Assembly (NCBI RefSeq): GCF_006345805.1
Contig: NC_043003.1
Span: forward strand, 92,814,001-92,878,000
Source: Octopus sinensis
Taxonomy: Eukaryota
Direction: 5' to 3'
DNA: 64,000 nucleotides
This document shows, in pieces, positions 7,276 through 10,400 of the stretch. The stretch's first letter is position 1; each line of letters opens with the position of its first letter. The notes under the pieces were generated by a model, which worked only from the letters and a program-made list of their open reading frames with translations, made no database searches and was not told the origin of the DNA. The position numbers and the translations under genes were made by a program.

Positions 7276-7429
7276 CTGATTCACATGGTCGAGAAAACTT
7301 TCTTCCGTGACCGGTCCTCGTCTTTTACTCTCGTCCAGGTAATAAATAGCCAGAGTGATGAAATTGTTCCATCGCTGTTTCCAGTCCTCCAGAGCTATTT
7401 CTCGTTCAGCAGCTGGAAGGGAACTAAAT
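7276..7429 (-). CDS. ADA2: ADA2 exon 9 (C-terminal helix + extension)
   Basis: ctttttag|A TTT AGT; (K)[51 protein letters not shown]. The W..RW..F pattern matches the ADA2 C-terminal helix. Candidate donor CAG|gtattc at 7276/7275. Alternative in-frame acceptors at 7534 and 7639. Confidence 0.85.
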
Positions 7430-10400
7430 CTAAAAAGACCCAAGTATAATAGCATTAATGAGGCCCTGCTGGGGTACCTCTTTGAACAGTTTTCCTTGAA
7501 CAAATCAACCCCAGCAGCTGGAAGGGAACTAAATCTAAAAAGACCCAAGTATAATAGCATTAATGAGGCCCTGCTGGGGTACCTCTTTGAACAGTTTTCC
7601 TTGAACAAATCAACCCCAGCAGCTGGAAGGGAACTAAATCTAAAAAGACCCAAGTATAATAGCATTAATGAGGCCCTGCTGGGGTACCTCTTTGAACAGT
7701 TTTCCTCGAACAAATCAACCCCAGTATTTATTTTTAAAGACTCGTATTTATTCTACTCTTTTTTGCCGAACGGCTAGGTTACGGAGACATAAACAAACTG
7801 ACATCGATTGTCAAGCGGTGATGCGGGACAAACACAAAGATACATAAACATACATACATGCATACATACGTACACACGCACACGCACACACACACACACA
7901 TAACACGCACGCATGCACACGCACCCCACATATACATGCACACACGATACGATGGACTTCCATGCAGTTTCCGTCTATAATAGAAGGTACTTTGCCAAAG
8001 CGTCGCGCAGTGGGACTGAACCCAAATTCACGTGATTGCAAAGCAGGCTTCTTAACCACACAACCGCACCTCTTATATCGACTTTAATATAATATATTGA
8101 TAGTGATATATTGATTATAATATATTGATTTCTTTAAAGTGAACATGTTGGTTAATCTTCCAAATCCACTCACAAGGGTTTAATTGGCCCGAGACTATAG
8201 TAGAAGACACTTGCGCAGGGTGCCATGCAGAGGGACTGAACCCGGAACCATGGGATTAGGAAGTAAAAGTTTTACTACAAAGCTACGACTGCACCTATAT
8301 ATTCGTTGGCTGTATAACATTTGCAATCTGACCATCTGTCACCCCCTTTTACCCTCTATTCGTATTCACTCTCATACTTACCTTCTTGTACCTTAAGAGT
8401 ACACACTGACGCCCTATCACCTTATCTCTGCCCTCATTTCTCTCTTTGCTGCTGGAGTAGCCATCTTTCTCTTCTCCAGCAAGATCCTCTATTATCCTGT
8501 TCTTGATCCTCTATTATCCTTTAACCTCTCAACGTCGGACTCAAAGCCACCTGCTTTAATACGAGAGCCCCACTCATTTGAGGTGCCGTGTCTTGCGAGT
8601 TACTAAGTGACCGCATAAGTTTCGTGTATTGACACTTATCAAACACGAATTTGTCCATTGTCACTCTGTAACTTCTGACGAAATAACTTCTAAAATGCAA
8701 AATTTTGTCAAAAACGTTAAGGGTAAACCCTGTTCTATATGAAACATTCTACCAGTATCGGAAGTTTGAAAGTGTTTAGTTAAAAAAAAAATAAAATAAT
8801 CTGTACGTCTAATTGAATAGATCCGAAATGGATGGAAGGCAAAGTCGACCTCAACAGAATTTGAACTCAGAACGTAAAGACAGACGAAATACCGCTTCTA
8901 AAATACAAAATTTTGCAAAAAACGTTACGAATAAACCCTGTTCTATGTGACAAATTCTACCAGTATCTGAATTGTTCAAGTGTTTAGTTAAAAAGAAATA
9001 AAATAATTGAATAATCTGTTCATCAAATTCGACCTCGGCGATTTTGAACTCAAAGCATAATGACAGACGAAATACCTATTTCTTTACTGCCCACAAGGGG
9101 CTAAACACAGAGAGGACAAACAATCGGATTAAGTCGATTACATCGACTCCAGTGCGTAACTGGTACTTAATTTAAGGATGAAAGGTACAGTCGACCTCGG
9201 CGGAATTTGAACTCAGAACGTAGCAGCAGACGAAATAACTCTAAGCATTTCGCCCGGTGCGCTAACGTTTCTGCTAGCTCACCGTCTTCGAATAAAAACA
9301 TTCATTTTAGAAATATATTCTTTATTCTTATTGCCTTAGCGTTACTTCTTACTTCCTTACTTACTGACATTAAATTTCGTAACATTTTACCTCATAACTG
9401 TTTTTCTGCTGATTTTTGTTCAATGCGACTAATGATTCTGAATTTCTCATGCATTTTCTATCATTTGAGCCTAAGAAAAATACACTTTTAATTTAAAGTT
9501 AAAAAAATTATGTTAATTGAAGATGAATATCTGCCTTACTTTACTTATTCGAGACAACGAATAAGTAAAGAAACTCTCTTTATTGCAAAATACAGGCCAC
9601 TTCTTAACGGGTCTACGACAAACAATTAATATACCTCAACTTTAGAATAAAAGAAATATTCACACACAAATATTACATTCCAAAGAATCCATTACTAATC
9701 ACAGCTAAAATCACAGCTATAATCCATAACATGCCAACTTCAAATCATACAACACCTCACTACTTTAACCCATTCATATTCTCCCCTCTCTGTTTTTTTC
9801 TTCTTCTTCCTCTTCTTCTTCATCATCATCATTATCATCATCATCGTCGTCATAATCATCACCACCATCACCATCATCGTCATCTTCTCCTTCTCCTTCT
9901 TCTTCTTCTTCTTCTTCTTCTTCTTCTTCTTCTTCTTCTTCTTCTTCTTCTTCTTCTTCTCCATCGTCATCATCATCATCAACATCGTCATCTTCTTCTT
10001 TTTCTTCTTTTTCTTCTTCTTCTTCTTCTTCTTCTTCTTCTTCTTCTTCTTCTTCTTCTTCTTCTTCTTCTTCTTCTTCTACCTCCCCACCTTCTACCCC
10101 TTAACTTTGTCACTAATGTTTTTTAGTATAACACCTACGCAAATTCTATAAACAAGCCTTTCAATAGAAATATTCTCCTGAATTGAACTGCGACTGCCAG
10201 CCGCCACTGACCATTCAAAATACGACCATCAGGGCACTCCCAGATTCTCCCACCCCCTTTCCTCATCAGCTTTCTTCCTCCACTACCCTACCAAGAACTC
10301 ACAACGACCTCCAACACACAAGTGCAAACAAGGGAGTCAGAGAAAGGCAGAATGCCACCTATATCTGAACACTACTATAGAAATATTCCTTTAAAAAAAC

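What the first reader, a model, noticed from the sequence alone, without database searches (positions are those of the whole stretch)
7407..7724. Exon-9 splice acceptor triplicated in frame: possible 0/+35/+70 aa isoforms
Seen: a 105-bp unit (35 codons) containing about 82 nt of intron end (TTAAT branch-like motif, ctttttAG) plus 23 nt of exon is present three times. This gives identical acceptors at 7429, 7534 and 7639, all in frame and stop-free. The upstream ones would insert [35 protein letters not shown] once or twice before the last ADA2 helix. Breakpoints share CAG microhomology, and a 10-bp inverted repeat (ctgctggggt/accccagcag) spans each junction, suggesting hairpin-assisted slippage. 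Inference: a very recent duplication, possibly a polymorphic VNTR controlling protein length.
Basis: partly seen in the sequence, partly recalled or inferred. Interest (0 to 1): 0.7.

Follow-up and report, generated by a model that had tools for sequence, protein, structure and literature searches.

The report
Triplicated splice acceptor in octopus ADA2
In the Octopus sinensis genome assembly, a 105-base piece spanning an intron-exon boundary of an adenosine deaminase (ADA2) gene occurs three times in a row and could lengthen the protein by 35 or 70 amino acids. The sister species has one copy and the only annotated protein uses the normal site, so it is most likely a very young, largely silent duplication.

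Summary
Window 7407-7724 holds three head-to-tail 105-bp units plus a 3-bp CAG, with one difference (T>C at 7707). Each unit is 82 nt of intron end plus 23 nt of exon, giving identical 3' splice sites whose exons start at 7429, 7534 and 7639 (minus strand). All are in frame and stop-free.

The gene is an intact ADA2/CECR1-type adenosine deaminase. The window is the Octopus sinensis assembly GCA_006345805.1.

New evidence:
- The sister species O. vulgaris, said to have diverged about 2.5 Mya, has exactly one copy. The array is therefore O. sinensis-specific and very young, or an assembly error.
- The only RefSeq protein (XP_036360305.1) joins exon 8 to 7429. No +35 or +70 isoform is in the collection.
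- 100 of 111 homologues keep the 15-residue spacing that only 7429 gives.
- Exon 9 is not the last exon. It is an internal 157-nt exon followed by a short terminal exon.
- The 10-bp hairpin exists only because of the duplication junction, so it is not evidence for how the duplication arose.

Best reading: a real, recent junction triplication that is mostly silent. Use of the upstream sites and copy-number polymorphism remain untested. This is an ordinary kind of variant and a neat young example.

The parts
7407..7724 (.). Tandem array: three 105-bp units plus a 3-bp CAG
   Evidence: TRF score 629, 99% matches. Copy comparison. Unit found nowhere else in the window. Single copy in O. vulgaris.
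7617..7721 (-). Unit nearest the 5' end of the transcript. It carries the derived base at 7707 (plus C, sense G) and contains the acceptor whose exon would start at 7639 (+70 aa).
   Evidence: O. vulgaris has the other base at the 7707 position.
7512..7616 (-). Middle unit, containing the acceptor whose exon would start at 7534 (+35 aa)
7407..7511 (-). Unit nearest the 3' end of the transcript, containing the native acceptor (exon starts at 7429)
   Evidence: This junction is used in XP_036360305.1. It gives the conserved 15-residue spacing.
7430..7431 (-). AG of the native 3' splice site (tcttttt-AG|ATTTAG). Identical AGs lie at 7535-7536 and 7640-7641.
   Evidence: Read directly from the sequence.
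7454..7462 (-). Branch-point-like motifs CTCAT and TTAAT (candidate branch A at -30 and -26). No AG lies between them and the acceptor. They recur at +105 and +210.
   Evidence: Read directly from the sequence. Their function as branch points is inferred, not tested.
7273..7429 (-). Exon 9 (157 nt, internal). It encodes (K)[51 protein letters not shown] and ends at the donor CAG|GTATTC.
   Evidence: Identical to XP_036360305.1. Gapless alignment to human ADA2, PDB 3LGD.
13305..13507 (-). Exon 8, donor CATCAA|GTAAGT, phase 2
   Evidence: tblastn hits. Gene model.
5779..5820 (-). Terminal coding exon DTFRSVFRESFNK plus stop, acceptor ttgtccAG|GAC
   Evidence: Peptide of XP_036360305.1 located in the window and in O. 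vulgaris.
7466..7517 (.). 10-bp inverted repeat CTGCTGGGGT/ACCCCAGCAG across the unit junction. A second copy lies at 7571-7622.
   Evidence: Folding -11.5 kcal/mol, z -2.1, against -6.7, z -1.2, for the outer, pre-duplication-like version.
5779..54628 (-). Whole ADA2/CECR1-type gene. Coding exons: 54628-54304; 46562-46407 (or to 46400 with a GC donor); optional 44591-44542; 42929-42860; 37886-37676; 30936-30809; 24755-24571; 16367-16210; 13507-13305; 7429-7273; 5820-5779.
   Evidence: Pfam A_deaminase_N plus A_deaminase. PDB 3LGD, E 6e-112. XP_036360305.1.

Best explanation
A 105-bp segment spanning the intron 8/exon 9 boundary of the Octopus sinensis ADA2 (CECR1/ADGF-type adenosine deaminase) gene has been duplicated twice in tandem, after the split from O. 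vulgaris.

Origin (inferred). The first duplication joined two sites that share 3 bp of microhomology (CAG on the plus strand). That pattern is typical of replication slippage, template switching or microhomology-mediated joining. The step from two to three copies needs only slippage or unequal exchange between perfect 105-bp repeats.

What it creates (shown). Three sequence-identical 3' splice-site modules (branch-like motif, short pyrimidine run, AG), 105 nt apart and in frame.

Splicing outcome (inferred). Splicing still goes mainly or only to the original, most downstream acceptor (exon start 7429), which yields the conserved protein. The upstream copies are followed by only 23 nt of true exon. 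They would also enlarge an internal exon from 157 to 262 or 367 nt, so they should compete poorly. On this reading the array is a young, nearly neutral minisatellite-like variant. It may vary in copy number, with at most minor +35/+70-aa isoforms.
For: Shown:
- The array and its exact anatomy.
- An intact 10-11-exon GT/GC-AG gene with A_deaminase_N and A_deaminase domains. It aligns gaplessly with human ADA2 (3LGD, E 6e-112) across the exon 8/9 junction when 7429 is used.
- 100 of 111 homologues have exactly 15 residues between NSIx and WxxxW, which only 7429 reproduces.
- The window is O. sinensis GCA_006345805.1.
- O. vulgaris GCA_951406725.2 is collinear at about 1-3% mismatch and has one copy. 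That copy has the same acceptor, and the same CTG sits at both unit boundaries.
- The two exon 9 differences between the species are synonymous.
- RefSeq XP_036360305.1 uses 7429. It also contains a GC-AG intron and a non-homologous 50-nt exon, which suggests the model rests on transcript data. It is the only member of its cluster, and no +35/+70 variants are in the collection.

From the literature:
- In beta-globin pre-mRNAs with a duplicated 3' splice site, the upstream copy was followed by 14, 55 or 205 nt of exon. Splicing went exclusively to the distal site, and the length of exon next to the upstream site is reported to govern the choice (PMC5389562).
- O. sinensis and O. vulgaris are reported to have split about 2.5 Mya (PMC10700109).
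Against: - No RNA reads were available, so use of 7534 or 7639 is not excluded.
- Junction reads into the two upstream copies are ambiguous with each other unless they extend at least 105 nt past the junction. They could have been dropped by the annotation pipeline, so the lack of annotated isoforms is weak evidence.
- The unit is a multiple of three and stop-free. By chance this has a probability of about 0.06 (0.186 for stop-free times 1/3 for in-frame). That fits slightly better if the upstream sites are used and out-of-frame versions were selected against.
- A natural BRCA1 intron 9/exon 10 tandem duplication does keep the duplicated intron piece in its mRNA (PMC11839443). There, however, 1617 nt of exon follow the upstream site.
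- No raw reads were available, so the copy number in the assembly is unverified.
Confidence: 0.55

Rival explanations
1. The triplication is real, and the upstream acceptors are used at an appreciable level. O. sinensis would then make ADA2 isoforms with one or two copies of a 35-aa intron-derived peptide in the loop before the C-terminal helix. Protein length would follow the copy number of a polymorphic VNTR.
For: - All three acceptor modules are identical over -82 to +23 and each has its own branch-like motif.
- The isoforms are in frame and stop-free. The chance of this is about 0.06.
- The insertion point is a loop between the two C-terminal helices in a homologue model.
- A natural junction duplication in BRCA1 is retained in its mRNA (PMC11839443).
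Against: - The only annotated product uses 7429, and no +35/+70 protein is in a collection of about 15 billion sequences.
- Spacing at this site is fixed in 100 of 111 homologues.
- Only 23 nt of exon follow the upstream sites, and duplicated-site constructs with short exon stubs splice to the distal site (PMC5389562).
- The insert is hydrophobic (LMLLYLGLF) and carries an unpaired Cys. It has no family match above the curated threshold.
Confidence: 0.2
2. Assembly or polishing artefact. The sequenced O. sinensis animal has one copy (or two), and the extra copies were introduced during assembly or polishing of GCA_006345805.1.
For: - The only independent assembly of a close relative has one copy.
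- The window is the same record as L001, so no second O. sinensis data set was seen.
- A second O. sinensis-specific duplication of the same length lies 11 kb away: an inverted one at 18247-18351/18356-18460, also absent from O. vulgaris.
- The O. sinensis assembly shows more duplicated BUSCOs (5.2%) than other octopus assemblies (PMC10700109).
Against: - The copies are not all identical (7707).
- The boundaries show a clean 3-bp microhomology, as in biological duplications.
- From general knowledge, assemblers more often collapse than expand short tandem repeats.
- The window contains other long-period tandem repeats.
Confidence: 0.2
3. The array is ancestral and O. vulgaris, or its ONT-based assembly, lost or collapsed the copies.
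For: No outgroup could be obtained. The O. vulgaris assembly is ONT-based (PMC10700109).
Against: - The copies differ by 0-1 of 105 bases, while the species differ by about 1-3% in the flanks.
- All three copies share the O. sinensis state CCCC where O. vulgaris has CCCCC.
- Long reads span a 315-bp array easily (general knowledge).
Confidence: 0.04

Closest known systems
Engineered pre-mRNAs with a tandemly duplicated 3' splice site (beta-globin intron 1 constructs of Reed and Maniatis 1986, reused in Chen et al. 2017, PMC5389562)
   Same: The architecture matches: the intron end plus a short stub of the exon is repeated upstream of the full exon, so identical acceptors compete in cis.
   Different: Those constructs are artificial, have two copies, and were tested in a mammalian system in vitro. 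Here there are three natural copies in a cephalopod gene with a 5.9-kb intron, and splicing was not measured.
BRCA1 tandem duplication of 395 nt of intron 9 plus 1617 nt of exon 10 (PMC11839443)
   Same: It is a natural tandem duplication across an intron-exon boundary. The duplicated intron piece can end up in the mRNA.
   Different: In BRCA1 the exon part is long (1617 nt against 23 nt here) and the result is a frameshift and disease. Here the unit is in frame and the annotated product lacks it.
Tandem (NAGNAG-type) alternative acceptors, and intron sliding or gain by tandem duplication of splice signals (Lehmann et al. 2010, PMC2891723)
   Same: Closely spaced duplicate acceptors are in frame. 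A duplication whose length is a multiple of three permits alternative products without a frameshift.
   Different: NAGNAG sites are 3 nt apart and share one branch point. Here the sites are 105 nt apart and each has its own branch region. No intron is gained or moved.
Human ADA2/CECR1 (PDB 3LGD) and molluscan ADGF-type deaminases (Helix pomatia AMP deaminase 9NTE, Aplysia AGSA 9NTI)
   Same: Both have the two-domain enzyme (A_deaminase_N plus A_deaminase). Alignment covers residues 32-504 with E 6e-112 to 9e-98, and the catalytic motifs are conserved.
   Different: This comparison concerns the host gene only. None of these proteins has an insert at the exon 8/9 junction.

Membership tests
ADA2 / CECR1 / ADGF adenosine deaminases (host gene) | N-terminal A_deaminase_N domain followed by the A_deaminase catalytic domain | tested here: met
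   Pfam PF08451 (E 7.8e-15) and PF00962 (E 8.4e-33), both above their curated cut-offs.
ADA2 / CECR1 / ADGF adenosine deaminases (host gene) | Full-length similarity to a solved ADA2, with the metal-binding and catalytic motifs (HxH, HAGE, RIGHG, SSDDP) present | tested here: met
   3LGD, E 6e-112, over residues 32-504. The motifs are visible in the model. H354, H382, D439 are invariant, and D440 nearly invariant, in a 57-sequence alignment.
ADA2 / CECR1 / ADGF adenosine deaminases (host gene) | Secreted protein with a signal peptide; deaminase activity | not tested
   A hydrophobic N-terminus ([25 protein letters not shown]) is visible. No signal-peptide predictor or assay was available.
Minisatellite / VNTR | Head-to-tail copies of a unit of tens of bases | tested here: met
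   Three copies of 105 bp, 99% matches.
Minisatellite / VNTR | Copy number varies among individuals | not testable with these tools
   Only one O. sinensis assembly was reachable. Between species the count is 3 against 1.
Alternative tandem 3' splice sites | Two or more acceptor modules (branch-like motif, pyrimidine run, AG) at an in-frame distance | tested here: met
   The modules are identical over -82 to +23 at 7429, 7534 and 7639. The products are in frame and stop-free.
Alternative tandem 3' splice sites | More than one of the sites is used in mature mRNA | not testable with these tools
   No RNA reads were available. The only annotated product (XP_036360305.1) uses 7429, and the +35/+70 sequences are absent from the collection.
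Hairpin-promoted replication slippage | A stable hairpin present before the duplication | tested here: not met
   The pre-duplication-like version folds at -6.7 kcal/mol, z -1.2, and 24 of 200 shuffles do as well. The 10-bp stem arises only at the new junction. The RNA of the whole array is no more stable than shuffles (z +0.44).

The most novel reading that the evidence does not exclude
The array is real and length-polymorphic in O. sinensis, and the upstream acceptors are used. A secreted ADA2 enzyme would then have acquired, within the last about 2.5 million years, one or two copies of a 35-residue peptide made from intron sequence. That would be protein sequence born by tandem duplication of a splice junction, caught before fixation or loss.
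Probability: 0.15. Interest if true: 0.5.

Novelty: new member of a known kind. Interest (0 to 1): 0.25.

Why it matters
If the upstream sites are used, this would be a dated natural example (under about 2.5 My, one sister species without it) of how a junction duplication turns intron sequence into coding sequence. It would also show how copy number could set protein length. In addition it would be a natural test of how identical 3' splice sites compete in a cephalopod. If the duplication is silent or an artefact, its main value is practical. Gene models and read mappers at this locus must handle three identical acceptors, and the O. sinensis assembly deserves a check for small lineage-specific duplications.

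Tried and rejected
- Protein search with the intron-derived peptide plus exon 9 found nothing. The first ADA2 search returned only hits of 47-63% identity. Both missed the identical RefSeq protein that later found, so negative results from that tool are weak.
- A degenerate-pattern scan of metagenome contigs for exon 9 gave 0 hits.
- Exact look-ups of window ORFs and of my spliced models, including the +35/+70 versions, were not in the collection.
A homologue was modelled instead.
- An O. bimaculoides outgroup locus is not on record.
- Rfam gave no match in the window.
- I first took exon 9 for the terminal exon, reading on into a (CT)n tract to a stop at 7102. I rejected this once XP_036360305.1 showed the donor at 7273/7272 and the exon at 5820-5779.
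- A weak resemblance between the in-frame intron translation ([11 protein letters not shown]) and the exon 8 peptide ([11 protein letters not shown]) appeared in tblastn extensions. I judged it to be chance.
- The AG 17 nt inside the exon (ccttccAG|CTGCTG) was considered as the true acceptor. I rejected it because it shifts the frame into a stop and breaks the conserved spacing.
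Full report
**1. What is in the sequence.** Window 7407-7724 is a perfect-register tandem array. Tandem Repeats Finder reports period 105, 3.0 copies, 99% matches, no indels and score 629. Units 7407-7511 and 7512-7616 are identical. Unit 7617-7721 differs at one base (T>C at 7707). The periodicity continues for three more bases (CAG, 7722-7724), which repeat the first three bases of the unit. 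A 50-nt probe from the unit occurs only at these three places in the 64-kb window, against 0 expected in shuffles. It is therefore not a dispersed element. The window is very rich in microsatellites and holds a few other long-period tandem repeats, but none as clean as this one.

**2. The gene.**
- On the minus strand the window carries one gene of the ADA2/CECR1/ADGF adenosine deaminase family.
- tblastn with homologues, followed by hand placement of splice sites, gave nine coding exons. All have GT-AG introns, consistent phases and no stop.
- The product has Pfam A_deaminase_N and A_deaminase domains.
- It aligns over residues 32-504 with human ADA2 (PDB 3LGD, E 6e-112). The next best solved structures are Helix pomatia AMP deaminase and an Aplysia AGSA chimera.
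- The catalytic motifs (LHVH, HAGE, RIGHG, SSDDP) are present and fall on invariant or nearly invariant alignment columns.

**3. The splice junction.**
- Exon 8 ends ...AAC TCC ATC AA|GTAAGT, with last exon base 13305 and phase 2.
- Each unit reads, on the minus strand...GGCCTCATTAATGCTATTATACTTGGGTCTTTTTAG|ATTTAGTTCCCTTCCAGCTGCTG. That is 82 nt of intron, with CTCAT and TTAAT branch-like motifs at -30 and -26 and no intervening AG, followed by 23 nt of exon.
- Joining 13305 to 7429 gives ...[30 protein letters not shown].... This aligns without a gap to human ...[30 protein letters not shown]....
- Among 111 homologues with a recognisable NSIx motif, 100 have exactly 15 residues between it and WxxxW, 2 have 13, and 9 lack WxxxW. 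Only acceptor 7429 reproduces 15.
- Joining to 7534 or 7639 keeps the frame. It inserts [35 protein letters not shown] once or twice, with no stop.

**4. Identity of the window and the comparative test.**
- A full-length protein search found XP_036360305.1, 'adenosine deaminase 2-A-like [Octopus sinensis]'.
- It is identical to my model apart from two features:
  - An extra 50-nt exon (window 44591-44542), reached from a GC donor 7 nt beyond my exon 2 donor.
  - A further terminal exon, DTFRSVFRESFNK plus stop, at window 5820-5779.
- Exon 9 is therefore an internal 157-nt exon (7429-7273) with the rather weak donor CAG|GTATTC. It is not the last exon. The ORF that runs on through the (CT)n tract to 7102 is not used.
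- The genomic locus of that protein (O. sinensis GCA_006345805.1, CM016865.1) matches the window at 106 of 128 sampled 40-mers with a single offset, and it has the same three acceptors. The window is this assembly, so the locus is not independent evidence.
- The orthologous locus of O. vulgaris (GCA_951406725.2, OX597820.1) is collinear with the window at about 1-3% mismatch.
- O. vulgaris has exactly one unit, with the same acceptor and exon.
- In O. vulgaris the unit is flanked by CTG on the sense strand and also ends in CTG. This is the 3-bp microhomology seen at the O. sinensis junctions.
- O. vulgaris has CCCCC where all three O. sinensis copies have CCCC, so a duplication there would be 106 bp and out of frame. 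This could be an ONT homopolymer error.
- O. vulgaris has the base found in the two downstream O. sinensis copies at the 7707 position. The C at 7707 is therefore derived.
- The two exon 9 differences between the species are synonymous.
- The two species are reported to have diverged about 2.5 Mya (PMC10700109).
- The array is thus specific to O. sinensis, or to this assembly, and is younger than the species split.

**5. How it arose.**
- The boundaries with 3-bp microhomology fit replication slippage, template switching or microhomology-mediated joining for the first duplication. Slippage or unequal exchange between perfect 105-bp repeats would then explain the third copy. These steps are inferred.
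- The version at the outer edge of the array represents the pre-duplication state. It pairs only 7 bp and folds at -6.7 kcal/mol (z -1.2; 24 of 200 shuffles fold as well).
- The junction version folds at -11.5 kcal/mol (z -2.1; 6 of 200).
- As RNA, the whole array is no more structured than shuffles (z +0.44).
- The hairpin is therefore a consequence of the duplication. It is not evidence for the mechanism.

**6. What it does.** This cannot be settled without RNA reads, and the following is inference.

Against appreciable use of the upstream sites:
- The only annotated product uses 7429. The model containing it includes a GC-AG intron and a non-homologous exon, which suggests it is transcript-based.
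- That product is the sole member of its 90% identity cluster. The +35/+70 sequences are not in the collection.
- Length at this point is almost invariant across animals.
- The upstream copies are followed by only 23 nt of authentic exon. In the classical duplicated beta-globin constructs the length of exon next to the upstream site is reported to govern choice. Chen et al. saw splicing exclusively to the distal site with 14, 55 or 205 nt of exon (PMC5389562).
- Use of the upstream sites would enlarge an internal exon with a weak donor from 157 to 262 or 367 nt.

For use of the upstream sites:
- The three modules are identical, and each has its own branch region.
- Being both a multiple of three and stop-free has a chance probability of only about 0.06. 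This comes from 18.6% of 105-nt intronic windows of this gene being stop-free in a given frame, times 1/3.
- The insertion point lies in a surface loop between the last two helices. In an AlphaFold model of homologue P0058 (mean pLDDT 84.9) these are H296-308 and H314-335.
- A natural BRCA1 junction duplication is retained in mRNA (PMC11839443).

Reads into the two upstream copies are mutually ambiguous, so annotation pipelines may under-report them.

My estimates are:

| Reading | Probability |
|---|---|
| Real and essentially silent | 0.55 |
| Real with appreciable isoforms | 0.2 |
| Assembly artefact | 0.2 |
| Ancestral array lost in O. vulgaris | 0.04 |

**7. Artefact question.**
- For a real array: one copy differs by a base, the junctions have biological-looking microhomology, and tandem repeats are common in this genome.
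- For caution: only one O. sinensis data set was reachable.
- That assembly has more duplicated BUSCOs than other octopus assemblies (5.2%).
- A second O. sinensis-only duplication of the same length lies 11 kb away. It is an inverted repeat at 18247-18351/18356-18460 with 97% complementarity and a 4-nt spacer, and O. vulgaris has only one arm.

**8. Comparison and novelty.**
- This is a lineage-specific tandem duplication of an intron-exon junction. The kind is known from engineered constructs, from human structural variants, and from models of intron sliding or gain and tandem acceptors (PMC5389562, PMC11839443, PMC2891723).
- It is a new, well-dated instance in a cephalopod ADA2 gene. It is not a new kind of element.
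- Interest is modest unless RNA data show that the upstream sites are used.

Noticed in passing
window 18247-18351 and 18356-18460: A 105-nt inverted duplication, 97% complementary with a 4-nt spacer, lies in intron 6. O. vulgaris has only one arm. The extra arm keeps the O. vulgaris-like base at 2 of the 3 sites where the arms differ. Its length equals the tandem unit at 7407-7724, which may be coincidence or a signature of the assembly pipeline.
   Followed up: partly
window 44542-44591 and 46400-46407: RefSeq product XP_036360305.1 includes an extra 50-nt exon ([17 protein letters not shown]) with no counterpart in homologues. It is reached from a GC donor (GTG|GCAAGT) 7 nt beyond the GT donor of exon 2. 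Skipping it also keeps the frame, so it may be an alternative exon.
   Followed up: partly
L002 (O. vulgaris OX597820.1) 10001-96531: The annotated O. vulgaris product (P0122, 487 aa) lacks exons 2, 9 and 10. It contains an intron-like piece before exon 7 and ends in exons 15-22 kb downstream of the ADA2 gene (about 89.3 and 96.5 kb in L002), next to a kinesin gene. It looks like an aberrant or read-through model, although exons 9 and 10 are intact in the DNA.
   Followed up: partly
window 6861-7250: A long GA/CT-rich low-complexity tract, including a 108-bp-period repeat at 6908-7179, starts about 20 nt downstream of the exon 9 donor. The exon 9 frame stays open through it to 7102, which can mislead ORF-based gene calling. 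The tract differs in length from O. vulgaris.
   Followed up: partly
window 22951-23676 (+) and 52821-53456 (-): Two intronic ORFs of 241 and 211 aa look by eye like decayed Tc1/mariner-type transposase remnants. A Pfam scan gave no hit at E <= 0.001.
   Followed up: partly
window 9540-10688 versus L002 65790-71551: Intron 8 of O. vulgaris holds about 5.7 kb where O. sinensis has about 1.1 kb, so there is a large indel between the sister species. Its content was not examined.
   Followed up: no
(tool behaviour): Two protein searches whose queries contained 50-218 residues identical to XP_036360305.1 did not return it. A later full-length query did. Negative results from that search should be treated as weak.
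   Followed up: yes
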